Virus record (IMG/VR): IMGVR_UViG_3300048591_000147
Location: 62,001-126,000 of that record
DNA length: 64,000 bases
Direction: 5' to 3' (one strand)
Below are positions 3,507 through 63,332 of the stretch, in pieces (the stretch's first letter is position 1; every line of letters starts with the position of its first letter). The notes below the pieces were generated by a model that saw only the letters and a list, made by a program, of their open reading frames with translations, was not told the DNA's origin and did no database searches. Both the position numbers and the translations under genes were made by a program.

Positions 3507-3929
3507 ATTTCAGACCCTCCCTCAACCCTCCAGTATAGCATAAAAACCCTCATTTGTCAAGCTTTTTCGACGATTTTCACCATCTGTTACAATCATCGTT
3601 CAGTTTGGCTTAACATTTGAAGAAAATTCACATTTTTCTATAAATTTTGGTCAGACGCTCCGCCTACAAACAGCATACACGAGTAATATATTATTGTCAA
3701 GTCTTGACATGTAATCATTTATAGTGTAGGCGAAACCCTGTTCAGCGTCTGTTCAGGATTGGTATGCTAAAATAGGGTGGAGGTTGGGAGAACTGTGCAA
3801 AATTCTCATCAGAACAGTTTACAATCTCGTTACAAAGTAGGTTTTTCACTGGTATTTCATCGACTTTTTCACCCATTTTGCTTAAAATGTAAAGGAAACT
3901 TGACATTTTCTGTCAAATATTTCGAACGA

Positions 3930-3977
3930 TTCAGGTTCTGTTCAGCTATCATGTGCTAAAATGGGTGCGTGGTCGGA
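3930..3977 (+). repeat. dispersed element copy: tandem TTCAG + TAAAAT + GGGTGCGTGGTCGGA
   Basis: ttcag-gttctg-ttcag-N11-taaaat-gggtgcgtggtcgga; a degenerate copy lies at 3741-3790. Confidence 0.85.
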
Positions 3978-4328
3978 GGGATAGGTCGAATTTCTGGTAA
4001 AAATGTCGATGAACGGTATAAAAAGACCGACGAATGGTGTTTTGCACTAGTGTTTCATCAACTTTTTCGCCATAGTTGCATTAAATTGTCTCTCATGGTA
4101 TGCTTTAGGCTCATCCAACGATCAAAAAGGCACTAGATGAACCCTAATAAGAAGAAAGAAGAACAGTCTAGCAACATGATGGATATGGCAGAGTCTGTCA
4201 TTAGCATCGCTGCTGACATCGTGGAGCTTAGTGCTAGTGCTGCGACTACTGTAGTCGATCATGGCTGTAGCGCTGGCAAGGCTATTGTAGAGAGTATGTG
4301 TGATATCGGATCATTCTTGGATTGACCC

Positions 4329-5054
4329 ATGAAAATTTTTTCAAACTTCAAAGACTATTACGATCACGTTCAAGCCTTCGGGCAGGATGAGGATGTTTCC
4401 TATATCCGTGCTACCAAGACGTATTGCGATCCCTATCGCAACCATTCCTATTTTCGTAATAACAATAAATGGGATTCAAGATATGTCTGGTATAAGGTTA
4501 TTCTTGATGGGGATGGTCGAGAGACTCTAGTTCATCGTGATCCTGAAGAACATATTATAACTCATGCTGGTTGGGGTGGTAATGTCATCACTGTGCACTT
4601 TTGTGGCAAAGTGTATTACGCCATTGAGCATAATGTTCACTCTACCCTTAAGAAGGAATACTTCTACGATCCTGCCAAGTATGAGAAATGGTTTAACGAA
4701 ACCAATCGCAGTCGTTATGATCGGTATTATCTAAAATCCGAATTGGAATTGCTTGCCAGCAATGGTAAGGTTGATCAGCGAGAATTGAACAAGATCAATC
4801 GAACGCCTATCATTCTGATCAAGAAAACTTATGAAGGTTTGTATAATATCCACAATCCTCGTCTAAATGTAATTGAGTTTCAAAAGGTTGTTGATCCTTA
4901 TACTGCATTCATGGAATTGGATATGTTTCTTTCAGGTGTGCTTGGCAAGACTGGCGGGGATATGGTTACAATCTCTGACAAAGACAAGATTGACAAGCAT
5001 GGGTTTGACATGCAATATGGATTCCGTACTCGTCCTAAAGGTGTATCAGCGTGA
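4329..5054 (+). CDS. phage hypothetical protein
   Basis: 241-aa ORF beginning MKIFSNFKDYYD and ending KHGFD...GFR; coupled to its neighbours. Confidence 0.8.
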   Translation: MKIFSNFKDYYDHVQAFGQDEDVSYIRATKTYCDPYRNHSYFRNNNKWDSRYVWYKVILDGDGRETLVHRDPEEHIITHAGWGGNVITVHFCGKVYYAIEHNVHSTLKKEYFYDPAKYEKWFNETNRSRYDRYYLKSELELLASNGKVDQRELNKINRTPIILIKKTYEGLYNIHNPRLNVIEFQKVVDPYTAFMELDMFLSGVLGKTGGDMVTISDKDKIDKHGFDMQYGFRTRPKGVSA

Positions 5055-5368
5055 TCTTTGAGATTTCTTTTATAGCCGCAGCCATAGTGGTTGGGAGTGT
5101 TGTTGGATTCTGGATTGGCAAGTCCTATACAGATAACAAGACTACTGTGCGTCTGCGAAAGCGTGGTTACACCATAAAGAATGTGACTAGCTATGGCTAC
5201 CATGCTGGCTATAAATTTGTCTATAATGGTTTTAATGATAAGCTTCAGACGGTTCTATCAGAAGGTCCAACGTTGCCAGAATGGGATGATGCTGTGGCCA
5301 ATGCGGATGCCCACTATTACGCCAAGACCATCAAAGATTCACCGTTTGACATCAACAAAGTTTGTTGA
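5051..5368 (+). CDS. membrane-anchored hypothetical protein
   Basis: N-terminal hydrophobic segment; GTGA overlap with the upstream stop. Confidence 0.65.
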   Translation: MIFEISFIAAAIVVGSVVGFWIGKSYTDNKTTVRLRKRGYTIKNVTSYGYHAGYKFVYNGFNDKLQTVLSEGPTLPEWDDAVANADAHYYAKTIKDSPFDINKVC

Positions 5369-5439
5369 TATCATTTGTTTCACACAAATGATTCGCTACG
5401 CGATATCATTACATCCTACGAACTGAAGAGATAGATTAA

Positions 5440-5784
5440 ATGAATGTCCGACGATATAGGGTAAATCGCGCTGGTCAGCTTGAAGAATCTGACACTGGCT
5501 TGGTGCTCCGTGTTTGCGATCATTGGAAGGAAGTTGAGAGACTTCAGAAGATCATTGATGAACAAAGTGTGACCATTAAAAAGTTGAAGGCGAACAAACA
5601 GAGTTTCTTTCTTGTGCAGCGATGGTATGGTAGTTCTAACCCAGAAAGGGACGTCAAGGATTACAATGAATTGCAAAGCTTCCTTGACTATTTGGCAGAA
5701 GATAAATCCATCACTGCCATTACCGTCTGTGCATTGCAACCTATTAAGGTCACTTGTAAGCAAGTGTTGACAGTCGAACTGTAA
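5440..5784 (+). CDS. hypothetical protein, distant paralogue of 2006/2342
   Basis: Same layout: short N-terminus, coiled coil, C-terminal ALQPI...VLTVEL. Confidence 0.7.
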   Translation: MNVRRYRVNRAGQLEESDTGLVLRVCDHWKEVERLQKIIDEQSVTIKKLKANKQSFFLVQRWYGSSNPERDVKDYNELQSFLDYLAEDKSITAITVCALQPIKVTCKQVLTVEL

Positions 5785-5822
5785 TCATATACACTAGCTA
5801 CATCAAATCAGGAAGTAAGACA

Positions 5823-6080
5823 ATGTCTGAAGAAACCAAAGTCCTCCTGTTAAAGGAACAGTTGCGGGAGATTTCTACACGGGTGCGTAATGATCTGACT
5901 GAAAAGTTCATTGCCAGCCTTGTTGGATATCTCAGGAACCGTGCCTTGGGTGGCTACACATTCTATGAAAGTGGTCCCATTCCTGATAATATTTGTAAAG
6001 AACAGTTGAAGGAATGGTTCAAGAGCGAAAAGATGATTATGTCTGTCAGGCATGATGACTCTATTGCTGTATACTGGTAA
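5823..6080 (+). CDS. hypothetical protein, tandem paralogue of 6115..6384
   Basis: RALGGY...IPDNICKEQL versus RAQAGY...VPTNICRDTL. Confidence 0.7.
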   Translation: MSEETKVLLLKEQLREISTRVRNDLTEKFIASLVGYLRNRALGGYTFYESGPIPDNICKEQLKEWFKSEKMIMSVRHDDSIAVYW

Positions 6081-6114
6081 TCCATTAAACCCCATCACGT
6101 AAAGGTATAATAAA

Positions 6115-6384
6115 ATGAAAGTTCTTTTGATTCGCTCCATGACTCAGGTCGGTCGCGCTGAAAGCACTACCAATTTCTATGCGGTCATCCTTGACCTGAT
6201 TGTCAAGCGTGCGCAGGCAGGCTATGGTGATCTGAAGTATGAAAAGGTTCCCACGAATATTTGCAGGGATACCCTTGTCTCGCAATTGCGAAATGATGGC
6301 TTCGCGGCTTCAGTCCGTCCCTATGCTGGTTGTCTGTCAGGATTGCGTGAATGGGACGTCCTGAACGTCGAATGGACAAACTGA
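6115..6384 (+). CDS. hypothetical protein, tandem paralogue of 5823..6080
   Basis: Shared motifs as listed for 5823..6080. Confidence 0.7.
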   Translation: MKVLLIRSMTQVGRAESTTNFYAVILDLIVKRAQAGYGDLKYEKVPTNICRDTLVSQLRNDGFAASVRPYAGCLSGLREWDVLNVEWTN

Positions 6385-9144: not shown

Positions 9145-9525
9145 ATGAGTACTGAAAACGCTGTTGAATCCGTTGAATCCACCACTGAAGTTGCTACTGC
9201 GGTTGCCACTGAAGTTGCTGCTGCTGTCGCTACTGAAGTTGCCACTGCCGTGGTTGCTAATGCTGCTGTCAGTGAATCCGAACTCGCTGAAGCCGTCGTG
9301 CATACCAGTGTATCAGCAGTGATCGAAGGTGTGAAGGCGAAGGGTAAGCCGGGTCGCAAGATTGTCCCCGGATCGAACCTCCAACGTGCCAAGTCGATTT
9401 TTACGCGCATGGCTGGTGCTGAACGCGCTGATGTTGTGGCTGCATTCGTCGCAGACAAGATTCCGAAGCCTTCTGCAAATACGTATTACCATTTGATCAA
9501 GAATGCGAGTAGCAATCCGTCCTGA
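9145..9525 (+). CDS. low-complexity acidic N-terminus plus basic putative DNA-binding domain
   Basis: TEVATAVA repeats, then KAKGKPGRK; TTGACA promoter at 9061; terminator at 9630-9661. Confidence 0.7.
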   Translation: MSTENAVESVESTTEVATAVATEVAAAVATEVATAVVANAAVSESELAEAVVHTSVSAVIEGVKAKGKPGRKIVPGSNLQRAKSIFTRMAGAERADVVAAFVADKIPKPSANTYYHLIKNASSNPS

Positions 9526-9691: not shown

Positions 9692-9735
9692 TTGACATGT
9701 AATTAATTACATGCTAAAATGGGCTGGAGGTCGGA
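9692..9735 (+). repeat. dispersed element copy: TTGACA-N17-TAAAAT-GGGCTGGAGGTCGGA
   Basis: Exact sigma70 spacing, with palindromic spacer TGTAATTAATTACA. Confidence 0.85.
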
Positions 9736-13341: not shown

Positions 13342-13389
13342 TTCATTTTATGTTCAGTATGGGAATGATAAAATGGGAGCGTGGTCGGA
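13342..13389 (+). repeat. dispersed element copy after the rIIB terminator
   Basis: ttcat-N6-ttcag-N11-taaaat-gggagcgtggtcgga; terminator hairpin at 13322-13341. Confidence 0.8.
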
Positions 13390-13428: not shown

Positions 13429-13950
13429 ATGAAAAATTTTATTAAAGTTGTATGCGCAACAGTCTTAGCATTCGCATCATTCACAGCAGTAGCAAAACCA
13501 ATCTATTTAACACTTCCACCAGTCCCAGTTTCCACTACAACTGTAGTTCCAGCGGACGCGTCTGGATATTGGGTTTCCCACCAAGTTGCTGGTCTTAGTT
13601 TGGTTCTAGCCTCTGGTAAATATTCTGCTGGTAGTTATGGTCCAGCAACCTGTGGTAAGGTCGTAAAGGCTACTGTGTCAATTCCTCGCGTATCGCCTAC
13701 TAATGGATGGCAGTTTGCGGCAGGCCATGTATATGATCCAACTAATACTGGCATCCCTTATGGTCAAACATTTAACTTATTGACTAAAGGTGCATTAGCT
13801 GGTACGATGAGTGTTGTAGCGTATGATTCAACTAATAACTATTTAACAATTCAGTTAAATACACCTGCTGGTGGACCTTCAGGTCAGTTTGTGTTAAACC
13901 GTGATTCATTAGTACCATACACAGCATTGATCGTTCCGAATTGTCCATAA
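13429..13950 (+). CDS. secreted or periplasmic beta-rich protein
   Basis: Signal peptide MKNFIKVVCATVLAFASFTAVA; GGAG RBS. Confidence 0.7.
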   Translation: MKNFIKVVCATVLAFASFTAVAKPIYLTLPPVPVSTTTVVPADASGYWVSHQVAGLSLVLASGKYSAGSYGPATCGKVVKATVSIPRVSPTNGWQFAAGHVYDPTNTGIPYGQTFNLLTKGALAGTMSVVAYDSTNNYLTIQLNTPAGGPSGQFVLNRDSLVPYTALIVPNCP

Positions 13951-14265: not shown

Positions 14266-14343
14266 GGCTCCGTAGCTTAGCGATCTAAAGCGGGTAATTC
14301 TAAACTACTGTCATCCTCGGTTTGAATCCGAGCGGAGCCACCA
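14266..14343 (+). tRNA. tRNA with CUA anticodon (amber-suppressor-like)
   Basis: GGCTCCG/CGGAGCC acceptor, ACCA end, loop TT-CTA-AA, T arm CTCGG-TTTGAAT-CCGAG. Confidence 0.75.
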
Positions 14344-14918
14344 ATATTTCTTCCACAATATGTTGAAGTTTGGCTATGACAATTTGGACATAACCATCTT
14401 AAATTTTCAATGCGATGATCATTCCGAATGCCATTTATGTGATCTAAATGTAATATTAATGGGCGCCCATTCCATATTAGTTCATTTGATAATATACATG
14501 AACTAATTGAACAATGATATGGAAGTAACGAATCTCTATGAATTCTACGTTTAACAACTGGCGTGTCTACAGTTGAATTTGCTTGAAATATATAAGAGTT
14601 TGGGTAATCCTTTTGCCCTGTGCATAATCGCTTTCTATCTATTGTTAGTTTTCCAGATTTAATCGCCAATGTTATAGCAGTAGGAGATATGCCAGTGGCC
14701 AATTTTAATTCTGTGATACACAGTCCTGTATCATATATTTTTTGAACTTCCACCCAATCATAATTTTTAGTTTTTACGCCGTGCTTCTTATTTAAAGAAT
14801 TTTGCCTAGCATGATAAGCTACGGTAGATTTTGCCACCCCAAGTTTATTGCAAATTTCACTATAAGTTTTTCCATCATTAATCATATTAATAATATCATC
14901 TTTTTTATTTGTCTTCAT
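14277..14918 (-). CDS. HTH + HNH homing endonuclease
   Basis: N-terminal HTH; LHLDHINGIRNDHRIENLRWLCPNCHSQT; GATAAATA upstream at 14949-14956. Confidence 0.85.
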   Translation of the reverse strand: MKTNKKDDIINMINDGKTYSEICNKLGVAKSTVAYHARQNSLNKKHGVKTKNYDWVEVQKIYDTGLCITELKLATGISPTAITLAIKSGKLTIDRKRLCTGQKDYPNSYIFQANSTVDTPVVKRRIHRDSLLPYHCSISSCILSNELIWNGRPLILHLDHINGIRNDHRIENLRWLCPNCHSQTSTYCGRNIGGSARIQTEDDSSLELPALDR

Positions 14919-37099: not shown

Positions 37100-37143
37100 T
37101 TGACTTATAATCAATTATAAGGTAAAATGGGTGCGTGGTCGGA
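37100..37143 (+). repeat. dispersed element copy
   Basis: TTGACT-N17-TAAAAT-GGGTGCGTGGTCGGA; two mismatches relative to the copy at 60360-60403. Confidence 0.9.
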
Positions 37144-41043: not shown

Positions 41044-41090
41044 CCGACCTCCAACCCATTTTACCATATCAATACTGAACAATAGCTGAA
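41044..41090 (-). repeat. dispersed element copy (minus strand)
   Basis: Reverse complement reads ttcag-N6-ttcag-N11-taaaat-gggttggaggtcgg. Confidence 0.85.
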
Positions 41091-41112: not shown

Positions 41113-41334
41113 TTAGAACCAACCGATGATGCAGCCAATCGGCCAGAGGAAGATTGCAACGATTCGTACCATCGTTTCACCATCAATGACTGATGCATTC
41201 CATACAGCCTTGACGTTCAACACCCATCCCCATGCCATCGCGGCAATAAACAGGCCAACCAGTGTTACGGTGATCCAGTTGGTCATACGATCAAGAAACC
41301 GCTTGCGCTTCGATACTCCTACCCAGTTAGCCAT
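41113..41334 (-). CDS. small membrane protein
   Basis: Two hydrophobic helices; TTGACT-N17-TATAGT promoter and GAGGA RBS on the minus strand. Confidence 0.7.
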   Translation of the reverse strand: MANWVGVSKRKRFLDRMTNWITVTLVGLFIAAMAWGWVLNVKAVWNASVIDGETMVRIVAIFLWPIGCIIGWF

Positions 41335-42602: not shown

Positions 42603-42684
42603 TAAGATGAACAAAGCCTGAATGACCTTCAGGCTTGTTCTTTACTTATAATCAATTATAGTGTAAAATGGGTGCGTGGTCGGA
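42603..42684 (+). repeat. long dispersed element copy (hairpin + promoter + G-rich core)
   Basis: First 34 bp identical to 48535-48568, then TTTACT-N17-TAAAAT-GGGTGCGTGGTCGGA. Confidence 0.9.
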
Positions 42685-45794: not shown

Positions 45795-46637
45795 TATGAG
45801 TCATGATAAGAAAGTCAAGGAACATCTAATTGCGCGAATGAAACAGTGTGAACTGTACGCGCTCCATTGGATGCATAGTGCTAGCAATGGTACATGCTTG
45901 AATCGTACCATGTATCGCTATAACGATGCTGGTGAAGAAGTCCTATTGACTCCCGATGAACTTCGTCAGGATGCCATGCGTACATCACAACGTCACATTG
46001 AGAATTTTAACCAAGCCATGGATGATCTCATGGGTTTGCCTGATGAAGCATTCAGCTAGCGTTCAGGTGACTATGGTATAGTTACTATACACAAACGGGG
46101 GTCACCATGAAAAACTACAAGATCACACTTGAAGATAAATTTCTGGTGACGGATGAAAAGTCAACCTCCAATTTCATTTGGGCTCTGACTGGTGGTGGCA
46201 TGTCAAAGGCAGCAACCATCAGAGCACTGAACGCATCGCGCGTACTGGACAATGATGGTCGATTGGAACTGAAGACCAAGGATGGCAAGATCGTCCTGTT
46301 CGAAACCATTCCGAAGTAAATCAAATGGATATGCACGATACAATTTTTGAGCTTGGAGAAAAATGTAAGTCATTACATGGACAACTTCGTGAATTGGGCG
46401 TGTCATCATTTGATACACCCGAAAAATTCCATGTGTATTGTATCCTGAATGCTGCATGGATTTGGACTGCATCCTATCACAGGCTATGCGAATATGGTAT
46501 AACTGATGAGATTGAAGAATCACTTGATGACGCTGAAAGATATCTGAATAAGATTAGAAGGACATAACTTAACGATTCTTCAAGTCAAAAGTCAATGGGG
46601 GCCTAGCTTCCGTTGACTGTTTCTTTACGATACTTCC

Positions 46638-46685
46638 CCGACCACGCACCCATTTTAACATAACTATTCTGAACGATAGCTGAAT
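46638..46685 (-). repeat. dispersed element copy (minus strand)
   Basis: Reverse complement ttcag-ctatcg-ttcag-N11-taaaat-gggtgcgtggtcgg. Confidence 0.88.
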
Positions 46686-47063
46686 GGAGAGCGCCCTGTT
46701 CGGTATATGCAACTCCGACAAACGCTCCCCATTCATTTTGTTACAAACTGACCTTGGCGTCAGCGGGCCATCCCAGATTGGTAGGAAACTTCACCTTTTT
46801 CGCCCCCACTTTCTCTCTTGGGCAGGGGTTGCCCACAACCTGTATCGTAGGTTGCTATCGCTACGGGCTATGGCCATCAGATACAACTCATTATACGAGT
46901 CCTTTGCCTTCTGGCTGCTGTGCTTTAGTGTGGAGCCAGTATGACACCGTGATACTGAACGAACCATGAATAGATTGTATTATCGCTCGTTACATTCTAT
47001 TCAGCAATGATTCAGTTAAGATGTCCCATAATGGATACACACTAAAGCAACGGAGCAAGCGTC

Positions 47064-47939: not shown

Positions 47940-48534
47940 TTCAGAATCCATTCATCTAGTGTGTAGTATCATAGCTACACACTAGAGCAAACGGAGAACG
48001 AAATGTCCGATGAACAGGTTCTGGCAGTGCTGGCACGAATGGCTGAAGACGCTGGCGATTATGCGGAAGCTGATCGCCTTCGCGAACCCTCCTACGATCA
48101 ATCAAAGGAAGTGTGATGAACCTTCCCACCAACATCCAGAATTTGATTGCCACTGCCCTCCCGGTTGACCCCGGAAACTACAACAATTCGATTGAAGCAT
48201 ATGACGGTGGTTATCGCGATGCGATGGAATCAATCGCCATGGCGTTGACTGGCACCATTCCAGAAGGATTGTTGTTGGATGCGGTGAATGCTGCACTGGA
48301 CGCATTCGCCAACAATTGTGCTGATGGTGATTTCGAGGATGATGGCCAGCCATCTGAACAGCAAGAATGGCGCGATTACGATCCTGACTGTTAAGCTGGC
48401 ATTCAGGTAGGTAGCGTATAATACAATACATCAACCAAGAGGGGAACGTCATGCAGGAAACAGAAGATCTGTGGGAAGCTGAATGGAACGCTTGGATGGA
48501 ATCGCAGGAAGATGAAGAGTTGGACTGCTGTCTG

Positions 48535-48615
48535 TAAGATGAACAAAGCCTGAATGACCTTCAGGCTTTTTCTTTACTTGTAATCAATTACATGCTAAAA
48601 TGGGTGCGTGGTCGG
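48535..48615 (+). repeat. long dispersed element copy upstream of the tail-fibre-like cassette
   Basis: Near-identical to 42603-42684. Confidence 0.9.
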
Positions 48616-48661: not shown

Positions 48662-49213
48662 ATGGCAAATACAAAGATTAGTGCGTTACCTGCTGCGACC
48701 AACCTGACAAGTGCTGAGTTACCTATAGCACAAGGTGGTGTCACTAAGAAGATTTCAGCCGCAGACCTTAACACACATATTCAAACTACGCTTGTTTCTA
48801 CTACTATAAGTCTAGGTGTGGTAGAATTAGCAACAACGGCTGAAGTTAGCGCTGGAACAGACACTGCTCGCGTATTGACTCCAGACACATACAGAAATGC
48901 TATTCCCTATTACATTAGCAGAAGCACATCCTACAATCTAGCGCTTACTGACAGAAACACTGACCAATGGTGTACTGCTGCTCTTACTGCCAACATCCCC
49001 GCAGAGAGTGGTGTAGCATTTGACATTGGCACTTCAATACCATTTCTTCGCATAGGTTCTGGTACTGTTACTATTGACGCCAACGGTGCAGTAACTTTGA
49101 ATGGTGTGCTTGGTGGTTCCTGTACCATACGCACACAATATCAAGGTGCCCTGTTAAAGAAAATCGGCAACGATAATTGGGTGATCAGTGGTGACGTGAG
49201 TGCTGTTGTATGA
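48662..49213 (+). CDS. tail-fibre-like structural protein
   Basis: TKISALPAAT start, GVVELATTAEV..GTDT.R.LTP repeat, Y....L.K...D.W...GD end; GATAAATA at 48631. Confidence 0.7.
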   Translation: MANTKISALPAATNLTSAELPIAQGGVTKKISAADLNTHIQTTLVSTTISLGVVELATTAEVSAGTDTARVLTPDTYRNAIPYYISRSTSYNLALTDRNTDQWCTAALTANIPAESGVAFDIGTSIPFLRIGSGTVTIDANGAVTLNGVLGGSCTIRTQYQGALLKKIGNDNWVISGDVSAVV

Positions 49214-49956
49214 ATAATTCTCAATACTATACTACAAGGCGCAATAAACTTGGTATTTTTATGATGGAGGAATTGTATACTGGTACAAGCACTTCATCTA
49301 TTCCAAATTATGAAGGATATACCCTATCATTCACTACGGCGCCAGCAGTAGGTCAATTGATAGTATTAACCACTCACTCAAGAAATTTCAATGTGGTTGG
49401 TGGTGTTGGTCCTGCGCCAACAATAGGCGGTCAACCTTTCCTATTAGCCGCTAGGGGTGGAACATATGGCGCTATCAGCCCCGGTGCAAGATCATACATG
49501 GCTGAGATATGGTATAGAACTGCAACTGCTGCTGATGCTGCAAATTCGTATACCGTATATTTCTGGGCGGATGGTGTCAATATGCTATCAGCTACAAAAT
49601 TCTCTGGTGGTACATATTGGGGTACACCAGAAGACCCAAACGTAACACCTGATTCAACATATGCTAATAGAGCGGCTACTGGTTCGACTTCTACCATTAT
49701 TGCTGGTGCGACTGGCGTCAATGTGTCTACAGGTGGTTTTGTTATTGCCGCTGGTGCAAGATTCACAAGTACATCCACGCCAACAGTCAACAATTCATTT
49801 TCATTAACATCACAGTCTTATAGTGAAGCAAGTTTTGGCGCGTTCCATGTTGCACGTAGAGATAACTATGACGCTGCGGCAGTCGCACAGAATACGACAT
49901 TCTCCTATAGTGGAAATGACTACATGGCATCTGCAATAGCAGCATTCAATCCTTGA
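49210..49956 (+). CDS. T/A/S/G-rich beta-strand protein, putative virion or receptor-binding component
   Basis: 248 aa with composition typical of fibre domains; ATGA-coupled to the preceding ORF. Confidence 0.6.
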   Translation: MNNSQYYTTRRNKLGIFMMEELYTGTSTSSIPNYEGYTLSFTTAPAVGQLIVLTTHSRNFNVVGGVGPAPTIGGQPFLLAARGGTYGAISPGARSYMAEIWYRTATAADAANSYTVYFWADGVNMLSATKFSGGTYWGTPEDPNVTPDSTYANRAATGSTSTIIAGATGVNVSTGGFVIAAGARFTSTSTPTVNNSFSLTSQSYSEASFGAFHVARRDNYDAAAVAQNTTFSYSGNDYMASAIAAFNP

Positions 49957-50003
49957 CCGACCACGCACCCATTTTAACATACTCATCCTGAATGAAATCT
50001 GAA
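49957..50003 (-). repeat. dispersed element copy (minus strand) abutting the stop codon at 49956
   Basis: TGA followed directly by CCGACCACGCACCC-ATTTTA, then two CTGAA boxes. Confidence 0.9.
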
Positions 50004-50022: not shown

Positions 50023-50217
50023 TCAGAATTTCAATTTGGATTCATAGATAGCTTCTTCAACCTTGGCTGCTTCGGTAGCTTTCTCAAGCGTATACCATTC
50101 CGATTTTGGCTTGATAGGAATATCAAATGCTGAAAACACTCCCCACATATCTTGTTCTTCAAGGTATGCAACGAAGTGATTTGATAGTTGAAACGCCGCT
50201 TTAGATTCTCCACTCAT
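50023..50217 (-). CDS. small hypothetical protein with a ~260-nt structured leader
   Basis: GGAG RBS; TTGCAA-N17-TATAGT promoter at about 50520-50492 (minus strand). Confidence 0.65.
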   Translation of the reverse strand: MSGESKAAFQLSNHFVAYLEEQDMWGVFSAFDIPIKPKSEWYTLEKATEAAKVEEAIYESKLKF

Positions 50218-50609
50218 AATATTCTCCAATAGAATCGCCCCACCCGGTTGACTAGACACGGATGGGGCAGCCCTGTAGCAATATTTATCAAGGGACTTTT
50301 TGTCGAAGGATTCGTCCCAGTCTTTCTACCTTGCAGCCGACTTTAGGGGCGCTGCTAACCTTCCGGCTTTACCGTTACCTATATGAGGGCCAAGTCATGT
50401 CTTAGGTTCTCTCTAATGCGTCCGTAGACTAATTTGATGCTCTGACCATCTCCGTTTCGATGGGGTTGTTGTTACCCCGTCGATGGATTGAACTATAGAC
50501 CCATCAATTGATTATTGCAACGACTATTTTGTAACAAGTTATGTTGCATTTCATTCAGCTATGATTCATGTTCATGCTGTAGAATTGATCATAACAACTG
50601 GAGAGACAA

Positions 50610-52260: not shown

Positions 52261-52308
52261 CCGACCTCCAACCCATTTTATACTAACCAACCTGAACAGA
52301 GTCTGAAT
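52261..52308 (-). repeat. dispersed element copy (minus strand)
   Basis: CCGACCTCCAACCC-ATTTTA followed by two CTGAA boxes. Confidence 0.85.
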
Positions 52309-54408: not shown

Positions 54409-54965
54409 TATGATAGTTTCACACTGAATGAGGGGCACGAAATGGCGATGAAGCTCTGGCGGTTGGATATGACTGATCATGAACATAACGATCATTACCA
54501 AGATGGCTGTCACAATTACGCCGATGGACATTATGTCATCGCTGAAACTGAAGCCCAAGCGCGTGCGATGATTGATGATCCCCGAACACCCGGAGTATGG
54601 GGAAATCCCGAATATTCTGCATGTGAAGAAATTGACATGACCGAACCACGGTATCTCACTTGCGAATATGATGTTCACTAATTGGAGAAAATACAATGCT
54701 TATCACCCGAGTTTCCCCGTGGAACGGTAAAGTAAATGAGCGCGATCTCCCTGTTACGGATGCACAGATGGAACGCTTCGCGAGGCGTGAAGATCACATT
54801 CAGAACATTTTTCCCGATCTGAGTGCTGGTGACCGCGAGTTCATCATGACCGGATACACTGAACAGGACTGGGACGAGTTGTTCCCAGAGGATGATGATG
54901 AAGCATAACTGAACGAACCCTGAATGATCTTCAGTGTTCTTCTTTACATCTATAACATAATATAG

Positions 54966-54986
54966 TAAAATGGGTGCGTGGTCGGA
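54966..54986 (+). repeat. dispersed element copy
   Basis: TTTACA-N17-TAAAAT-GGGTGCGTGGTCGGA. Confidence 0.88.
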
Positions 54987-55073
54987 GGGAGTCGAACCCT
55001 CTAGGTGATCAAGCCTTGTCTCCGTAAGCTGCACATTCAAGTGCTGTGCGAATCAACACACGCCATCTAGCCC
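54985..55073 (-). pseudogene. degenerate class-II tRNA lacking its 3' acceptor strand
   Basis: GGGCTAG start, D-like, anticodon-like (CTTGAAT) and variable arms, GAGGG-TTCGACT-CCCTC T arm, then the repeat element. Confidence 0.5.
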
Positions 55074-55079
55074 ATATAA

Positions 55080-55229
55080 TCAATCAACCTGTTCAATCCT
55101 GACATATGCTTCTTTTTCGTAGTCGTACATTGCGAATGCGTCGTACCGTGGGCCGATCATGATCTTATCATAATCCGCATCTGCTGGCAACATTCTGATC
55201 AACTCAGCCAGACTAAACTCTCTACTCAT
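55080..55229 (-). CDS. small acidic protein (49 aa)
   Basis: MSREFSLAELIRMLPADADYDKIMIGPRYDAFAMYDYEKEAYVRIEQVD; in the minus-strand operon. Confidence 0.55.
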   Translation of the reverse strand: MSREFSLAELIRMLPADADYDKIMIGPRYDAFAMYDYEKEAYVRIEQVD

Positions 55230-55404
55230 TCGCTTTATGATAGTGCGGTTTGCCATTTCAGGTTCTCGTTACGCATCTTTGCATCCTCATCCGCAGTCCA
55301 TTGGCATGCCCATGAACTATACGCATGTACTTCAGCATCGTCAACATTGAAAACACACCATAGTGCTGTGTCTTCATCGTAATCGGCATAGTACGGACCA
55401 TCGT

Positions 55405-55605
55405 TCATTCTTCTACTCCACACGCCTTGATGAACTTCGCTTTATCGAAATTCGGATTGGTGGCTGCTAAATCATCAGCCAATCCCGGAATGAAATTAAA
55501 ATCAAACTGGTTGAGGAAATTTCCAGAACCGTATCGGGTTATGCCTGTGCGCACTGCTGACATCTGCAATGCAATAAACTCGAAGTGTTGCCGACTCATC
55601 TTCAT
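55405..55605 (-). CDS. small hypothetical protein
   Basis: MSRQHFEFIA...NPNFDKAKFIKAC; AGGA RBS. Confidence 0.7.
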   Translation of the reverse strand: MKMSRQHFEFIALQMSAVRTGITRYGSGNFLNQFDFNFIPGLADDLAATNPNFDKAKFIKACGVEE

Positions 55606-56265: not shown

Positions 56266-57003
56266 ATGAGTGAAATGATCGCCTTTCCATCCATCGAATC
56301 TTTGCGCCATGTTGTCAAAGGCACGGAAATTCGTTGCAAAATCAATAACTTGCAGTTGCCCAAGGTCGAGTACATTGGCACTGTCAAGCTCCATGGCAGC
56401 AATGCGTCTGTGCGATTCACTGCGGATGGCCAGATCATCCCACAATCTCGCAACCGTGTGCTGAGCGTTGGCGATGACAATTTCGGCTTTGCCGCATTCG
56501 TTGAAAAGAACAAACCACTTTTCAAGCATTTCCAAGACATCATTCCCGAAAATGAATTCACAGTTTACGGTGAGTGGTGTGGTGGTAGTGTTCAACCCAA
56601 GGTAGCATTGGAGCAATTGGAAAAGCATTTTGTCATCTTTTCCATCTTGATTGATGGTGTCATGTGCCCAGTGGTGCTGGGTGGTGATGTGTTTGTCTGG
56701 AATGAAGCTGGAATCTGGTGTGTCAGTCAAATTCCAACGTATAAGATCACAGTCGATTTCAGTCGTCCAGAAGATGTGGTTGATGAACTGACCGGTCTTA
56801 CCATCGCTGTAGAAAAGGAATGTCCATGGGGTAAATTCCGTGTGCAGAAGGATTTCAACAATACTTGCACCATTAACAATGGTAATATCACATGGGATAA
56901 TGATATTGCGGATTGCAAACTAAAGGATGAAATAGAATCAAAGATTATCCGATATGTCCAAGCAAATAACTTGCTTAGTAAGAGAATTACCATTTCTGTT
57001 TGA
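56266..57003 (+). CDS. rnlB: RNA ligase 2 family, N-terminal fragment
   Basis: FPSI..LR, motif I KLHGSN, QSRNR, DN.GFA and GEWCG; conserved part ends after ECPWGKF. Confidence 0.8.
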   Translation: MSEMIAFPSIESLRHVVKGTEIRCKINNLQLPKVEYIGTVKLHGSNASVRFTADGQIIPQSRNRVLSVGDDNFGFAAFVEKNKPLFKHFQDIIPENEFTVYGEWCGGSVQPKVALEQLEKHFVIFSILIDGVMCPVVLGGDVFVWNEAGIWCVSQIPTYKITVDFSRPEDVVDELTGLTIAVEKECPWGKFRVQKDFNNTCTINNGNITWDNDIADCKLKDEIESKIIRYVQANNLLSKRITISV

Positions 57004-58006
57004 TAAAGGTATATTCATTATACTGAATTTCATCAGGATGGCGCAACAATCGTTTAATTGTCTTATCATTGGCTCCAAGTTTGGTAAGAAACTTCCCAAT
57101 GCTGATAATGGTAAACTCGCTATTATCAGCATTGTTTTTTACTATGTACTTGTTTGATGATAATGGAGCATATTCACCGCTGACGAATCTATCATCTAAT
57201 ACTGACATGCGACATACTTGATTGTTTATATTTCTAACAGTCATCATTTTCTGGCGCATATTACTCAATTTCTGTTTTGTTTCTTCTGAATGTTTCATGC
57301 CTTTATTATGATGCTTGAATATTTCACTAGAATACTCAGAAGTTTTGATTCTACATTTGTTACCACGCACATCAAATACAGTAACATATCCTTTGGAATG
57401 TCCTACAAGATTAGGATTACTTGCAAATTCAGAATTATTAACCAATATCTTGTTGCCGCTTGTGATATCTAACGCCACAACCTTGTTAGTATTACACGGT
57501 ATCATATATGAACTATCAAAGTCTTCACTCGTTATCTGCCGTATGATACCGTTATTGGTATCGAACACTTTGAATTTACCTTTGGTAATACCAACATACC
57601 CATCCGTAGACTCACCAGTTTTAACTATCTCCGGTTTCATGGTAGTTGTGTTCAACATCAATCGATTATTCTTGTTCCTACTATGCTGAAGACTGCATGA
57701 AAATCCTCTAGAAGTTTGTTTTGCTTTATTATAGAATGATGGGTTAGTATCTACATTGAATCTTTTATGTAAACGAATCTCCAAGTTCAATGCTTTAGTT
57801 TTTTCTGTAGTTGTGTATAGTACAATATATTTGTAGTGTGATCTATTGGTTAATTGATCTTTTACAAATTCTTTGTCCTTGGATGATGAAAAATATTTAA
57901 CTCCCAAGTCATTGACAGGTAACACATTTGATGGTATGCTTCTGTATCCATAGTAATGTTTACCAAGTAATTTATTGGTAATGCGATACACATAATAAAT
58001 TCTCAT
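56987..58006 (-). CDS. GIY-YIG homing endonuclease inserted antisense in the RNA ligase 2 gene
   Basis: YYVYRITN...HYYGYRS, YFSSS, FYN.A and HSEETKQKLS; TATAAATA at 58068-58075 (minus strand). Confidence 0.85.
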   Translation of the reverse strand: MRIYYVYRITNKLLGKHYYGYRSIPSNVLPVNDLGVKYFSSSKDKEFVKDQLTNRSHYKYIVLYTTTEKTKALNLEIRLHKRFNVDTNPSFYNKAKQTSRGFSCSLQHSRNKNNRLMLNTTTMKPEIVKTGESTDGYVGITKGKFKVFDTNNGIIRQITSEDFDSSYMIPCNTNKVVALDITSGNKILVNNSEFASNPNLVGHSKGYVTVFDVRGNKCRIKTSEYSSEIFKHHNKGMKHSEETKQKLSNMRQKMMTVRNINNQVCRMSVLDDRFVSGEYAPLSSNKYIVKNNADNSEFTIISIGKFLTKLGANDKTIKRLLRHPDEIQYNEYTFIKQKW

Positions 58007-60134: not shown

Positions 60135-60359
60135 ATCGTCTAGGGATCATGGGGGGTTGGGTGGCTGAAGATGCCCAACCCCGAATTGTATCACAGCCAA
60201 CCTGAACGGTAGCTGAATGAAATAATCATGTGACAACCTGTTACAATCCTGTGCGGTGTCAGGATTAAGGAAAGTCAACAACCAGCATCATACTCCAATC
60301 GAATTGAGAGCACAAGTAGAAAATATCAGCCGTGCTGAATCTTACTTGTAAGATAATGC

Positions 60360-60403
60360 TTGACGTATAAACAATTATAAGGTAAAATGGGTGCGTGGTC
60401 GGA
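60360..60403 (+). repeat. dispersed element copy
   Basis: TTGACG-N17-TAAAAT-GGGTGCGTGGTCGGA. Confidence 0.9.
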
Positions 60404-61186: not shown

Positions 61187-61216
61187 AGAAGCGCCCTTCG
61201 GGGCGCTTTCTTTTTT
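61187..61216 (+). terminator. intrinsic terminator
   Basis: AGCGCCC-TTCG-GGGCGCT followed by a T run. Confidence 0.8.
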
Positions 61217-61230
61217 GCCCAACGATGCTT

Positions 61231-61278
61231 CCGACCTCCAGCCCATTTTAGCATATCATTCCTGAACGCATGATGAAT
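61231..61278 (-). repeat. dispersed element copy (minus strand)
   Basis: CCGACCTCCAGCCC-ATTTTA followed by CTGAA and ATGAA boxes. Confidence 0.85.
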
Positions 61279-61727
61279 GGGGTATCCATCTGGGTGATCT
61301 TCCCATTTGGAACCCCATTCAGGTACAGATGTTCGCGGTTCCCCCAACATCACTCTATCAGTCTGTCGATAGAGGTACTTCATAATCATTATTTTTTTAT
61401 ATTCCTAATTTATAGTGGTTCGTCCAGTCAAAGACTGTTACCTTAGTCAGGTCCAAGTCATGTTCTATGCCCTCCATTCTGTCTTTAGTGGGTTCATTTA
61501 TTACATTTTAGGCGAGTATCGCAGACTATGTAAGTTTGATTAGAGGTTAGAAGACACTTTCTCCTTGGTGGGTGTGTGTGTTGCTTTAGTGTGGAGCCAG
61601 TATGACACCATCAAGCTGAACGGTTGCTGAACAAATTGTAATGTAAATCGTTGATTTCGTTACAATTCAGTGCTTGACTGCATAACATAATAGGTCTATT
61701 ATTCAATCATACCAAGTGGAGAACGAC

Positions 61728-62204: not shown

Positions 62205-62213
62205 CCAAAACTG

Positions 62214-62245
62214 TTCAGCAATCGTTCAGCTAAGTGATGTATAAT
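62214..62245 (+). promoter_or_regulatory. tandem-TTCAG promoter (representative of about 40 sites)
   Basis: TTCAG-CAATCG-TTCAG-CTAAGTGATG-TATAAT, followed by an A/C-rich leader and AAGGA RBS. Confidence 0.8.
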
Positions 62246-62271
62246 TCAATCATACCAACAAGGAACAGACC

Positions 62272-62517
62272 ATGAACTCCAGCGAACTCAAGCGCAACAT
62301 CGAACGTAACAATCCCGGTAGCCTGTTCTTTTCGCGTGGTGCCATGCAGAATGGCGGTGACACGATGCGCAACTATGGCGTCTGCACTGCAAAGATCATG
62401 ACCCCAGATGGTGAAAAAGAGGTATGGGAATTGTATCGCCGTCAAGCCACCCCACGGGGTTACACTAGCTCAGTGTATTGGGACAAGGCAACATTCAAAG
62501 TGGTCTACAAGGTCTGA
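62272..62517 (+). CDS. small hypothetical protein
   Basis: NPGSLFFSRGAM..GDTMRNY; monocistronic cassette. Confidence 0.75.
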   Translation: MNSSELKRNIERNNPGSLFFSRGAMQNGGDTMRNYGVCTAKIMTPDGEKEVWELYRRQATPRGYTSSVYWDKATFKVVYKV

Positions 62518-62577
62518 TTCAGCTAACGTTCAGGTTCTGAGCGTATAATACATTACATCAACCAAGGGAATGCAGCC

Positions 62578-62967
62578 ATGATCCTGAACACTGTCGAAGC
62601 CACCATCGCTTGCGAAGCTGCAACCACCATTCTGCTGGGGCATTTCCCGCATTTCATGGTCAATATTCGGGTGACGAGAATTCTTGGCGAGGTCGTTCAG
62701 TTCACCGTTGCCAACGTTCCCACCGAAAAGGATGCGCCCTATGGGATCATCCACAATGCATCCTTTCTGCTCAAAGGTCTGATCCAGACTGACCGCAAGG
62801 GAGCATACATGGAGAATCCGATTCTGTCTGGCCGTCACCTGAAGTTCCGCAAGATCAGCGGTTCCAGTGAAGCCGAAGTGTTGCAAAAGTTCGTGGCATG
62901 GTGTGTCAAGAACAAGGCGGAAATTCTCGCCATCGTCCCGAAACTTCGCGGGTATGAGGTCAGTTAA
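62578..62967 (+). CDS. hypothetical protein
   Basis: Tandem-TTCAG promoter at 62518-62549 abutting the previous stop codon. Confidence 0.75.
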   Translation: MILNTVEATIACEAATTILLGHFPHFMVNIRVTRILGEVVQFTVANVPTEKDAPYGIIHNASFLLKGLIQTDRKGAYMENPILSGRHLKFRKISGSSEAEVLQKFVAWCVKNKAEILAIVPKLRGYEVS

Positions 62968-63245
62968 GCTGGCGTTCAGGTTGTGGGGGTATAATACAAC
63001 ACATACCAAGGGAGAACGCAAAATGTCAAAGAAACGACGTGTCATGGTTCGCGAGACAACGATACGTTTCTCCCCAGTCTTCGAGTGTGAGTGTTGCGGG
63101 AAGGTAGAGGTTGGAGTTGCATTCTCTCAGACATTCTATCATCGTCTACCAGAGCTTGACGAGATAGATGTTCCAGCGCATACGCTGCCACCCGGCTGGA
63201 TAATGTTTCACAATCTCCAGTACTGCGTCAATTGTAACATCGAAT

Positions 63246-63270
63246 GAGCCCTTCGGGGCTCTTTTTTATT
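63246..63270 (+). terminator. intrinsic terminator
   Basis: GAGCCC-TTCG-GGGCTC followed by a T run. Confidence 0.8.
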
Positions 63271-63285
63271 GTGCCACCACTTCCT

Positions 63286-63332
63286 CCGACCACGCACCCA
63301 TTTTACTACACCCACCCTGAACAGAACCTGAA
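63286..63332 (-). repeat. dispersed element copy (minus strand)
   Basis: CCGACCACGCACCC-ATTTTA followed by two CTGAA boxes. Confidence 0.9.

What the first reader, a model, noticed from the sequence alone, without database searches (positions are those of the whole stretch)
3768..63305. Dispersed promoter-linked G-rich element bracketing gene blocks as inverted pairs
Seen: 15 copies of TAAAAT-GGG(TGCGT/YTGGA)GGTCGG. Plus-strand copies are at 3768 (degenerate), 3957, 9715, 13369, 37123, 42664, 48596, 54966 and 60383; minus-strand copies at 41063, 46657, 49976, 52280, 61250 and 63305. All are intergenic and preceded by a correctly spaced upstream element: TT(G/T)AC with an often palindromic 17-bp spacer, or tandem TTCAG (all six minus copies). 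From 37 to 50 kb they alternate +/-/+/-/+/-, enclosing 3.9, 4.0 and 1.4 kb blocks. Most copies have no RBS or ORF of their own, because downstream genes carry separate promoters, and the minus copies point into the 3' ends of plus-strand genes. Established: T4 origins are middle promoters making persistent R-loops, and promoter/stem-loop cassettes (PeSL) mediate modular shuffling in some T4-type phages; this sequence resembles neither. Inference (alternatives): distributed G-rich R-loop primers or origins, a family of short RNAs with a common 5' end, or recombination/inversion sites delimiting exchangeable modules. This is the best candidate for an undescribed system in the window.
Basis: partly seen in the sequence, partly recalled or inferred. 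Interest (0 to 1): 0.9.

Follow-up and report, generated by a model that had tools for sequence, protein, structure and literature searches.

The report
Shared start-site box of phage promoters
A 20-base G-rich sequence repeated 15 times in this uncultured jumbo phage is the -10/start-site core of a family of host-type promoters; these sit in terminator-promoter cassettes between gene blocks, so it is a real, strongly conserved variant of known T4-type regulatory cassettes whose G-rich part remains unexplained, with no sign that it is a replication or recombination system.

Summary
In detail: 15 copies of TAAAAT-GGG-(TGCGT|YTGGA)-GGTCGG lie at the stated coordinates, against 0.1 expected by chance. 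All are intergenic, and each has a correctly spaced upstream promoter element. The window is part of a 315-kb IMG/VR jumbo-phage contig. I found 79 distinct copies in at least five related uncultured phages and none in the closest cultured relatives.

Gene-sense copies mostly have a TTGAC/TTTAC -35, a 17-bp spacer and often an upstream terminator hairpin, which is the architecture of a PeSL (promoter-early stem-loop). Antisense copies use the phage's own TTCAG-N6-TTCAG box (37 copies in the window) in place of a -35. They sit just behind the terminator of the preceding gene and fire back into it.

Whole cassettes bracketed by convergent copies are present or absent between relatives. However, ordinary promoters of the same region mark mosaic junctions just as often, so the box is not a special recombination site. 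I found no support for R-loop origins, Chi sites or a coding function.

Best reading: a promoter family sharing a discriminator and an invariant +3..+8 GGTCGG, read by RNA polymerase (RNAP) or a common factor. A subset would give roughly 40-70-nt RNAs. This is a new variant of a known kind, of moderate interest.

The parts
3741..3787 (+). Class B G-box promoter, degenerate: TTCAG-N6-TTCAG-N11-TAAAAT-A-GGGTGGAGGTTGG. It lies in the 1.4-kb non-coding region.
   Evidence: The ortholog keeps the same variant in relative L013 2303-. A similar single promoter occurs in phage RAS14.
3930..3976 (+). Class B G-box promoter, allele TGCGT
9692..9734 (+). Class A G-box promoter (TTGACA-N17-TAAAAT, allele CTGGA). 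It is followed by a second sigma70-like promoter and then rIIA.
13342..13388 (+). Class B G-box promoter just after the rIIB terminator hairpin. It directly precedes the RBS and ATG of gene 13429-13950.
37100..37142 (+). Class A G-box promoter (TTGACT-N17-TAAAAT) at the start of a 3.9-kb block. It is followed by an A-loop hairpin (GTGTGGTAAAAATACAACAC) and a second promoter.
41044..41090 (-). Class B G-box promoter pointing back into the terminator and 3' end of gene 40739-41023. It is preceded on the minus strand by the terminator of gene 41113-41334(-).
42614..42683 (+). PeSL-like unit: terminator hairpin (42614-42636) + TTTACT-N17-TAAAAT + G-box, followed by a TTCAG promoter for gene 42783.
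   Evidence: (D10)
46638..46684 (-). Class B G-box promoter facing the plus-strand terminator at 46590-46618
   Evidence: Against relative R1, homology ends 3 nt beyond the core.
48545..48615 (+). PeSL-like unit: hairpin 48545-48569 + TTTACT-N17-(TG)TAAAAT + G-box. It is the only promoter for gene 48662.
49957..50003 (-). Class B G-box promoter abutting the stop codon of gene 49210-49956, downstream of minus-strand gene 50023-50259
52261..52307 (-). Class B G-box promoter (allele TTGGA) facing a plus-strand hairpin
54913..54985 (+). PeSL-like unit (hairpin + TTTACA-N17-TAAAAT + G-box) pointing at the 3' end of the minus-strand block 55080-55605 and a tRNA-like T-arm
60360..60402 (+). Class A G-box promoter (TTGACG-N17-TAAAAT), followed by an A-loop hairpin and then a TTCAG promoter for gene 60505
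61231..61277 (-). Class B G-box promoter (allele CTGGA) 21 nt behind the plus-strand terminator 61188-61209
63286..63332 (-). Class B G-box promoter 24 nt behind the plus-strand terminator 63246-63261. It is back-to-back with the TTCAG promoter of gene 63411.
60185..60220 (-). Probable decayed copy: TTCAG boxes + TACAAT + TCGGGGTTGGGC
   Evidence: (D11)

Best explanation
The element is the core of a family of host sigma70-type phage promoters. TAAAAT is the -10 hexamer, GGG is the discriminator, the predicted start is the invariant G 7 nt after the -10, and GGTCGG occupies +3..+8, followed by a purine-rich stretch. This core is built into composite terminator-promoter cassettes of the PeSL/PmSL kind, and these punctuate the hyperplastic, small-gene arm of an uncultured 315-kb jumbo phage.

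Gene-sense copies mostly carry a near-consensus -35 and often an upstream terminator hairpin. They act as early promoters that launch transcription into a gene block, commonly in tandem with a second, gene-proximal promoter. Copies of the second type replace the -35 with the phage's TTCAG-N6-TTCAG direct repeat, which I infer to be a binding site for an activator of the PhoB/MotA type. Many of these sit immediately behind the terminator of the preceding gene and fire back into it. They would give either roughly 40-70-nt RNAs ending at the bidirectional terminator or antisense RNA to the gene's 3' end, and would also oppose read-through from the preceding block.

The same box follows two unrelated upstream architectures. 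Conservation peaks at +1 and +3..+8 and dips at -3..-1. I therefore infer that what is selected is the start-site and 5'-leader sequence itself, read by RNAP (open-complex stability, or early pausing at C+6/G+7) or by one common factor acting on the DNA at the start site or on the RNA 5' end.

Shown: the copies, their promoter anatomy, their placement, their conservation and their confinement to this region. Inferred: promoter activity, the start site, and the role of the box.
For: 15 copies against 0.1 expected by chance.

Every copy has a correctly spaced -35 or TTCAG tandem box, and class A copies rank among the best sigma70 matches.

TTCAG-N6-TTCAG occurs 37 times against 0.25 expected. 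About 22 of these are stereotyped gene promoters with TATAAT at N10-11 and an ATG 55-63 nt downstream, so the box is a genuine promoter element of this phage.

Terminator hairpins lie directly upstream of 42664, 48596 and 54966. This matches the published PeSL and PmSL definitions (PMC4122927).

79 distinct copies occur in at least five related phages, with the core invariant while spacers and flanks vary.

Upstream class correlates with orientation: class A is sense in 16 of 19 copies, class B antisense in 16 of 25.

13 of 16 class B antisense copies meet a GC-rich hairpin within 45 nt of the core, against 1 of 9 class B sense copies. In the window, plus-strand terminators lie 20-35 nt before 46657-, 61250- and 63305-.

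GTGGTCGG never occurs outside these promoters (10 of 10).

All exact copies lie within about 65 kb of the 315-kb genome.

The ATG inside the box opens only short, unrelated ORFs.
Against: No transcription data exist, and the host is unknown.

General promoter function does not require an invariant GGTCGG at +3..+8 or an invariant TAAAAT rather than TATAAT. A specific reader is therefore implied, but none was identified.

Three copies just outside the window have CAAAAT, a weakened -10, while keeping the G-box.

Convergent pairs only 50-60 bp apart are awkward for a purely transcriptional reading.

The predicted 5' end shows no special structure or accessibility compared with shuffled controls.
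Confidence: 0.55

Rival explanations
1. The terminator-facing copies are genes for a family of small non-coding RNAs of about 40-70 nt. These would share a 5' 'seed' (G-N-GGUCGG-purines), followed by an A-rich linker and a Rho-independent terminator, and would act in trans on host or phage RNAs or titrate an RNA-binding protein.
For: 12 copies have a hairpin plus T-rich tail in their own direction, predicting RNAs of 39-68 nt. Examples are L006 729+, L008 4217+ and L032 35+. Conservation is highest in the predicted transcribed positions +1 and +3..+8 and extends as purines to about +13. Convergent mini-pairs conserved between two phages would make short RNAs.
Against: Only 12 of 79 copies have a convincing own-direction terminator. 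The bodies are unrelated, because they are simply the reverse complement of whatever terminator lies there. The 5' end is no more accessible than in shuffled controls. The complement CCGACCAC occurs nowhere else in the window, so there is no phage target. Sense copies with the same box clearly lead into mRNAs.
Confidence: 0.2
2. The G-rich box is a dispersed asymmetric DNA operator overlapping the start site. It would be bound by one phage (or host) protein that switches this whole promoter set off or on together, as the P1 C1 repressor does at its scattered 17-bp operators.
For: The box sits at a fixed position over -6..+8 in every copy regardless of upstream architecture. TAAAAT is invariant instead of the TATAAT used by the other promoters. 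The box is kept even where the -10 is weakened to CAAAAT. There are two discrete alleles, as would be expected for operators of graded affinity.
Against: No candidate binding protein was identified. Conservation dips at -3..-1 and +2, in the middle of the putative site. There is no symmetry. None of this distinguishes DNA reading from RNA reading.
Confidence: 0.2
3. The copies are recombination sites: inverted 20-bp repeats, or targets of a site-specific nuclease or recombinase, that delimit mobile or invertible gene cassettes.
For: Convergent pairs bracket four blocks in the window. A whole [G+ ... G-] cassette lies between homologs of genes 48003 and 48116 in two relatives but is absent from the window, where those genes overlap. 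Three different contents abut the conserved 46657- copy in three phages. 18 of 21 inter-phage pairs share homology on one side only.
Against: Control TTCAG/TATAAT promoters give the same one-sided fraction (27 of 31, p=1). The junctions at the inserted cassette are not clean, show no target duplication, and the neighbouring gene's N-terminus has diverged. In the about 40 genes compared, no bracketed block is inverted in any relative; the one orientation mismatch, the 55235 homolog in relative R1, lies at a different site. The box is always tied to a complete promoter in fixed register, which a recombination site would not need. Inverted repeats cannot excise the DNA between them.
Confidence: 0.08
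4. The copies are distributed replication origins or primers: transcripts with G-rich 5' ends form persistent R-loops (or G-quadruplex-stabilised hybrids) that prime DNA synthesis, as at T4 oriF and oriG.
For: Many copies make no obvious mRNA. Class B copies resemble activator-dependent 'middle' promoters like those at T4 origins. Allele 2 (GGG-CT-GG-A-GG-TC-GG) fits a two-tetrad G4 pattern. Two copies lie in a 1.4-kb non-coding, repeat-rich region.
Against: There is no G-rich or AT-rich zone beyond +13: downstream GC skew is +0.116, as in the window generally (+0.03 to +0.15 in most 2-kb bins), with A+T about 56%. Antisense copies hit a GC hairpin within 45 nt. Runs of only two Gs are weak R-loop or G4 initiators. 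Twenty-odd origins packed into 65 kb of a 315-kb genome is implausible. Cumulative GC skew shows no inflection.
Confidence: 0.04

Closest known systems
PeSL / PmSL composite terminator-promoter cassettes of T4-type phages (Arbiol et al. 2010, PMC2839356; Comeau et al. 2014, PMC4122927)
   Same: Both have a stem-loop or terminator directly upstream of a sigma70-type early promoter (TTTAC/TTGAC-N17-TAWWAT), plus a parallel version in which a phage activator box replaces the -35. Both are repeated many times in the hyperplastic small-ORF region and lie next to indels and gene swaps between close relatives.
   Different: The window's elements carry an invariant G-rich box from -6 to +8 that PeSLs lack. 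Most are not followed by the SD and start codon of a gene. The activator box is a TTCAG direct repeat, not TGCTT. About a third to a half point against the genes, directly behind a terminator, so that blocks are bracketed by convergent rather than tandem copies. That arrangement cannot yield the mini-circles proposed for PeSLs.
T4 early and middle tandem promoters, and MotA-box or PhoB-box promoters where an activator site replaces the -35
   Same: Both show an upstream early promoter plus a gene-proximal activator-type promoter before the same gene. In both, the activator box lies 10-12 bp upstream of the -10. The TTCAG boxes have an 11-bp direct-repeat periodicity like Pho boxes (from general knowledge).
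   Different: The box sequence differs, and no MotA, AsiA or PhoB homolog was identified here. Conserved initially transcribed sequence is not a feature of those promoters.
Dispersed asymmetric operators of the phage P1 C1 repressor
   Same: Both are non-palindromic sequences of 14-17 bp scattered over many promoters of one phage, overlapping the promoter or start site.
   Different: No repressor is known here, and the resemblance is recalled from general knowledge, not tested.
T4 replication origins oriF (uvsY) and oriG (34)
   Same: Both involve an activator-dependent promoter that gives a non-coding transcript.
   Different: There is no downstream DNA-unwinding element. The copy number is far too high, and transcripts run straight into terminators.

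Membership tests
PeSL (promoter-early stem-loop) | Stem-loop (terminator-like) immediately upstream of the promoter | tested here: met
   Hairpins at 42614-42636, 48545-48569 and about 54916-54938 abut the -35, as in many relatives. This is not seen at 9715, 37123 or 60383.
PeSL (promoter-early stem-loop) | Sigma70-like early promoter: -35 TTGACA/TTTACW, N17, -10 TAYWAT | tested here: met
   Six plus-strand copies have TTGAC/TTTAC-N17-TAAAAT.
PeSL (promoter-early stem-loop) | Shine-Dalgarno and start codon of the downstream gene at the 3' end of the element | tested here: not met
   Among the PeSL-type (class A) copies only 48596+ has an adjacent RBS and ATG; class B copy 13369+ also does. The others are followed by a hairpin, a second promoter or the 3' end of an opposing gene.
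PeSL (promoter-early stem-loop) | Concentrated in hyperplastic regions and adjacent to indels or replacements between close relatives | tested here: met
   All exact copies lie within about 65 kb of 315 kb. Cassette presence/absence and content swaps occur at copies, but no more often than at control promoters.
PeSL (promoter-early stem-loop) | Recombination between tandem copies producing mini-circles | not testable with these tools
   This needs PCR or long reads on phage DNA. The bracketing copies here are inverted, so this mechanism cannot apply to them.
PmSL (promoter-middle stem-loop) | Mot box (TGCTT) at about -30 plus a -10, with an upstream stem-loop | tested here: not met
   The layout is the same: hairpin GAATGG..CCATTC overlapping the first box, and the box 11 nt from the -10. 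But the box is TTCAG-N6-TTCAG, not TGCTT.
T4-type R-loop origin | Middle promoter followed by a DNA-unwinding element and a persistent R-loop | tested here: not met
   Downstream composition is ordinary (GC skew +0.116, A+T about 56%), and hairpins lie within 45 nt. The R-loop itself is not testable here.
Hfq-type trans-acting sRNA | Discrete short transcript with an accessible conserved seed and a Rho-independent terminator with a U-tail | tested here: inconclusive
   12 of 79 copies have a hairpin plus T-tail (39-68 nt). The seed is no more accessible than in controls, and there is no complementary site in the window.
Chi-like recombination hotspot | Short G-rich word scattered through the genome, including coding DNA, independent of promoters | tested here: not met
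   GTGGTCGG occurs 10 times, all inside G-box promoters. Hits in bacterial genomes are at chance level.
Protein-coding or leader-peptide ORF starting at the ATG in TAAAATGGG | Conserved reading frame and product | tested here: not met
   The ORFs are mostly 7-40 aa, with a few longer read-throughs into unrelated sequence, and their tails are unrelated. There is no SD, and the ATG lies upstream of the predicted start site.

The most novel reading that the evidence does not exclude
Inward-facing G-box promoters define self-contained expression cassettes. The back-firing copy behind each terminator would make an RNA of about 50 nt with a family-wide 5' tag (G-N-GGUCGG), or hold a poised RNAP. That would actively insulate or silence the early cassette in concert with all the others through one tag- or box-reading factor. 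This would be a phage-wide regulatory layer not described for T4-type or jumbo phages.
Probability: 0.2. Interest if true: 0.65.

Novelty: new variant of a known kind. Interest (0 to 1): 0.4.

Why it matters
If the box is read by a single factor, as DNA or as an RNA 5' tag, it defines a regulon of at least 19 promoters in the early arm of an uncultured jumbo-phage clade. That would offer a handle on how such phages time and insulate dozens of small accessory-gene cassettes. The convergent 'promoter behind terminator' design would extend the PeSL concept from a recombination scaffold to an active insulator or antisense device. If the box is only a promoter-intrinsic sequence, the finding is a useful annotation: a promoter and cassette grammar for this clade, including the TTCAG-N6-TTCAG activator box. 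It would not be a new system.

Tried and rejected
Coding ORF from the internal ATG: rejected, because the ORFs are short and unrelated.

tRNA origin of the box: one copy (54966) abuts a minus-strand T-arm-like hairpin, and a relative has the same hairpin 20 nt further away. But ARAGORN and Rfam find no tRNA there and the fold is no better than shuffles. I take this as adjacency to a decayed or tRNA-like 3' element, not the origin of the box.

Known RNA family: Rfam finds only tRNAs.

Known phage DNA: no megablast hit in 50,697 phage records. The closest cultured relatives (Stenotrophomonas phages RAS14 and CM1, Xanthomonas phage Xoo-sp13; 36-47% aa identity) lack the family; RAS14 has only one similar promoter.

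Host identification through bacterial genomes: the 5 hits are chance level and have no promoter context.

Chi-like site: rejected.

R-loop or G-rich zone and 5' structure: no signal.

Specific association with synteny breaks: the raw result looked striking (18 of 21 one-sided) but vanished against the control promoters.

Complementarity of UGGUCGG to the ...CCGACCA 3' end of tRNA-Pro, resemblance of TGGTC to a T7-type primase site, and a two-tetrad G4: noted as coincidences. None can be tested here and none is statistically compelling.

Literature search for the motif or this phage group found nothing relevant.

Full report
OBSERVATION. Allowing 3 mismatches adds only two intragenic hits, which is chance level. 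The variable pentamer has two discrete forms, TGCGT and YTGGA. Oriented flanks show two upstream architectures in fixed register with TAAAAT.
- Class A has TTGAC/TTTAC, a 17-bp A+T-rich and often palindromic spacer, and frequently a TG extended -10. Copies: 9715, 37123, 42664, 48596, 54966, 60383.
- Class B has TTCA(G/T)-N6-TTCAG-N11. Copies: 3768, 3957, 13369 and all six minus copies.
Against public gene calls for the same phage all copies are intergenic. The alternation and the block sizes of 3.94, 3.99 and 1.38 kb are as stated.

WHAT THE DNA IS. The window is identical to part of IMGVR_UViG_3300048591_000147, a contig of 314,956 bp. It encodes rIIA and rIIB, RNA ligases 1 and 2, an ArdC-like protein, about 20 tRNAs, homing endonucleases and many small ORFs, nearly all on the plus strand. 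No phage in INPHARED is similar at the DNA level. The nearest cultured phages are the roughly 310-320-kb Stenotrophomonas phages RAS14 and CM1 and Xanthomonas phage Xoo-sp13, at 36-47% amino-acid identity. Exact copies of either allele occur only between window positions 3.7 kb and 67.7 kb. The second figure lies just past the window end and was read through L011 and L019. No exact copies occur elsewhere in the 315 kb.

THE ELEMENT IS A PROMOTER CORE. TTCAG-N6-TTCAG occurs 37 times against 0.25 expected. About 22 of these are stereotyped gene promoters: the boxes, then N10-11, TATAAT, a G-poor CA-rich leader, an SD, and an ATG 55-63 nt from the first box. The tandem box is therefore this phage's own replacement for a -35. 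Its 11-bp periodicity and 10-12-bp distance to the -10 recall activator boxes such as Pho or Mot boxes (general knowledge; inference). The G-box copies use either this box or a near-consensus -35, always with TAAAAT in the canonical -10 position. Class A copies are among the best sigma70 matches in the region. GGG directly after the -10 is the discriminator that favours stable open complexes in E. coli (general knowledge). The predicted start is the invariant G seven nucleotides after the -10, so GGTCGG is +3..+8. The ATG inside TAAAATGGG opens only short, unrelated ORFs, mostly 7-40 aa, so the box is not coding.

IT IS BUILT INTO TERMINATOR-PROMOTER CASSETTES. Copies 42664, 48596 and 54966 share an 82-nt unit of GC hairpin, T-run overlapping TTTAC, N17, TAAAAT and G-box (D10; hairpins scored as terminator-like). 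Many class B copies have a hairpin (GAATGG...CCATTC) whose 3' arm is the first TTCAG box. This is the layout published for PeSLs and PmSLs in T4-type phages, namely a stem-loop followed by an early or Mot-box promoter, clustered in hyperplastic regions (PMC4122927). There are three differences from PeSLs: the invariant G-rich box, the usual absence of an adjacent SD and ATG, and the orientation pattern.

ORIENTATION AND SURROUNDINGS. Plus copies lead into gene blocks. They usually have a second promoter 40-90 nt downstream (9715, 37123, 42664, 60383), and twice they sit directly before an RBS (13369, 48596). Five of the six minus copies lie 20-35 nt behind a plus-strand terminator hairpin and point back at it; the sixth abuts a stop codon. 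Four of the six are themselves preceded on the minus strand by a short minus-strand gene or promoter-leader unit. Several are back-to-back with the TTCAG promoter of the next plus gene, for example at 63286-63392.

COMPARISON ACROSS RELATED PHAGES. Scans of the viral and metagenome collections found the exact core only in related large phage contigs. Hits in bacterial genomes are at the chance rate and lack any promoter context. Among 79 distinct copies from at least five lineages:
- Class A copies are gene-sense in 16 of 19 cases and class B copies antisense in 16 of 25 (Fisher p=0.002; the copies are not independent).
- 13 of 16 class B antisense copies meet a GC-rich hairpin starting within 45 nt of the core, against 1 of 9 class B sense and 4 of 16 class A sense copies.
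- 12 copies have a T-rich tail in their own direction, predicting RNAs of 39-68 nt.
Three kinds of convergent pair only 50-60 bp apart exist. One is conserved between two lineages (window coordinates 67619+/67689-, L009 2854+/2954-).

CONSERVATION PATTERN. The pattern search itself fixes part of the core, so only relative values are meaningful. Information content is maximal at the -10, at GGG, at +1 and at +3..+8. It is lower at -3..-1 and +2, the positions where the two alleles differ. It continues as a purine preference to about +13 and then drops to zero. Spacers, -35 regions and everything downstream vary freely. GTGGTCGG occurs ten times in the window, and every occurrence is inside a G-box promoter.

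(a) Recombination and modules. Relative R1 and the window lose homology within 3 nt of the core at 46635 and 54988. Gene-order maps and sequence show a complete unit between the homologs of genes 48003-48116 and 48116-48394 in relatives R1 and R3. The unit consists of hairpin, class A G-box, TTCAG promoter, one or two genes, terminator, class B G-box pointing back, and a divergent promoter. In the window the two flanking genes overlap (ATGA) and no such unit is present. Three different gene sets abut the conserved 46657- copy in the window, R1 and R3. Of 21 inter-phage copy pairs with detectable flank homology, 18 are homologous on one side only. The control removes any specificity, however: ordinary TTCAG/TATAAT promoters in the same loci give 27 one-sided of 31 (p=1). 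Mosaic junctions therefore fall at intergenic promoter cassettes in general, as in the PeSL model, and not at the G-box in particular. No bracketed block was found inverted in a relative. The one orientation mismatch, a homolog of 55235 in R1, lies at a different site and looks like a paralog.
(b) R-loop origins. The 60 nt after the box have a GC skew of +0.116 and about 56% A+T, much like the rest of the window. Antisense copies immediately meet GC hairpins. Cumulative skew shows no inflection. There is no support for this reading.
(c) Short RNAs. This is plausible for the subset with own-direction terminators. However, the bodies are simply antisense to the local terminator, the 5' end is no more accessible than in shuffled controls, and no complementary site exists elsewhere in the window.

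ORIGIN. RAS14 has no such family: one weak hit in 50 kb, which is chance level. That hit lies in the equivalent long non-coding, G-rich-repeat region a few kb upstream of rIIA. It reads TTGACA-N17-TAAAAT-AGGTGGGAGGCCGG and is followed by a second sigma70-like promoter. It resembles the window's degenerate copy at 3768 and that copy's ortholog in R1. A single ancestral early promoter may have been the seed of the family (inference).

MECHANISM. Shown: a repeated, conserved promoter core in two upstream contexts, embedded in terminator-promoter cassettes, confined to the accessory-gene arm, with a strong tendency of the activator-type copies to face terminators. Inferred: class A copies are immediate-early host-RNAP promoters for cassettes. 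Class B copies fire after an activator appears and give short or antisense RNAs that oppose read-through. The invariant +3..+8 GGTCGG, with GGG, is read either by RNAP itself (a very stable open complex, or early pausing at C+6/G+7, from general knowledge of initial-transcription pausing) or by one common factor acting on start-site DNA or on the RNA 5' end. I cannot separate these readings with sequence alone. I put about 0.55 on the transcription-signal reading as a whole, about 0.2 each on the more specific sRNA and operator versions, and below 0.1 each on dedicated recombination or replication functions.

VERDICT. This is a real and unusually well conserved feature. It is best filed as a new variant of PeSL/PmSL-type regulatory cassettes in an undescribed jumbo-phage clade, with an unexplained start-site box and an unusual convergent arrangement. 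Interest is moderate.

Noticed in passing
window 2726-4136: A 1.4-kb stretch with no called gene. It is rich in TGGTAAAAA / GTGG..AAAA..CCAC hairpin-like repeats (8 exact TGGTAAAAA in the window against 0.74 expected, 4 of them here) and contains a ~198-bp duplicated unit. The same A-loop hairpin (GTGTGGTAAAAATACAACAC / GTTGCGAAAAAACAAC) follows several class A G-box promoters here and in relatives. RAS14 has a comparable G-rich non-coding region upstream of rIIA. This may be a protein-binding array, an origin, or a nut-like RNA hairpin.
   Followed up: partly
whole window, e.g. 37634, 38020, 53483, 60767, 62214, 62518, 63352: TTCAG-N6-TTCAG (37 exact copies against 0.25 expected) is the phage's main promoter box. 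In about 22 copies it replaces the -35, sits 10-11 nt before TATAAT, and is followed by a conserved G-poor leader, an SD and an ATG at 55-63 nt. It is probably the site of an activator binding direct repeats one helical turn apart.
   Followed up: partly
L019 18855-18975 (window coordinates about 67600-67720); L009 2854-2973; L001 341-433; L040 118-236: Convergent G-box pairs only 50-60 bp apart enclose GC-rich hairpins. One type is conserved between two phage lineages. Both strands would be transcribed into complementary RNAs of about 90 nt.
   Followed up: partly
window 54986-55085 (minus strand): A perfect T-arm-like hairpin (GAGGG-TTCGACT-CCCTC) on the minus strand directly abuts the G-box of 54966+. 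The relative L033 has the same hairpin 20 nt from its copy, and L009 8068+ faces what looks like the 3' end (T-arm and acceptor strand) of a minus-strand tRNA. ARAGORN and Rfam call no tRNA in the window at this site, so it may be a decayed tRNA or a tRNA-like 3' end of the minus-strand transcript.
   Followed up: partly
window 38663-38767: Rfam scores a full-length tRNA (61 bits) spanning 105 nt that ARAGORN missed. It probably carries an insertion or intron, and it overlaps the start of a called ORF.
   Followed up: no
window 14266-14343: A tRNA with anticodon CTA (an amber-reading suppressor type, labelled Pyl by ARAGORN). RAS14 also carries a tRNA-Sup-CTA. This may hint at stop-codon reassignment or suppression in this phage group.
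   Followed up: no
window 46915-46970 and 61580-61631 (minus strand): A third repeated promoter-leader unit on the minus strand: TTCAG boxes, then CATACT, then GGCTCCACACTAAAGCA. It heads about 300 nt of sequence with only tiny ORFs and ends at a class B G-box copy. These may be decayed genes or non-coding RNAs.
   Followed up: no
window 34024-34953(-), 56987-58006(-), and other minus-strand ORFs such as 14277-14918 and 26129-26887: Free-standing homing-endonuclease-like genes (PHROG hits for the first two) lie on the minus strand among plus-strand genes. The relative R1 lacks the 55.9-58.5 kb segment that contains RNA ligase 2 and the HNH gene.
   Followed up: partly
window 42783-43094: A small protein with a cREC_REC (cyclic-phosphate-processing receiver) domain (E=3.6e-23). 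It sits among the RNA ligase, CCA-adding enzyme and tRNA genes, suggesting an RNA-repair theme in this arm.
   Followed up: no
window 9184-9268: 12-nt tandem repeats (ACTGAAGTTGCY and similar) inside gene 9145-9525, giving a repetitive peptide.
   Followed up: no
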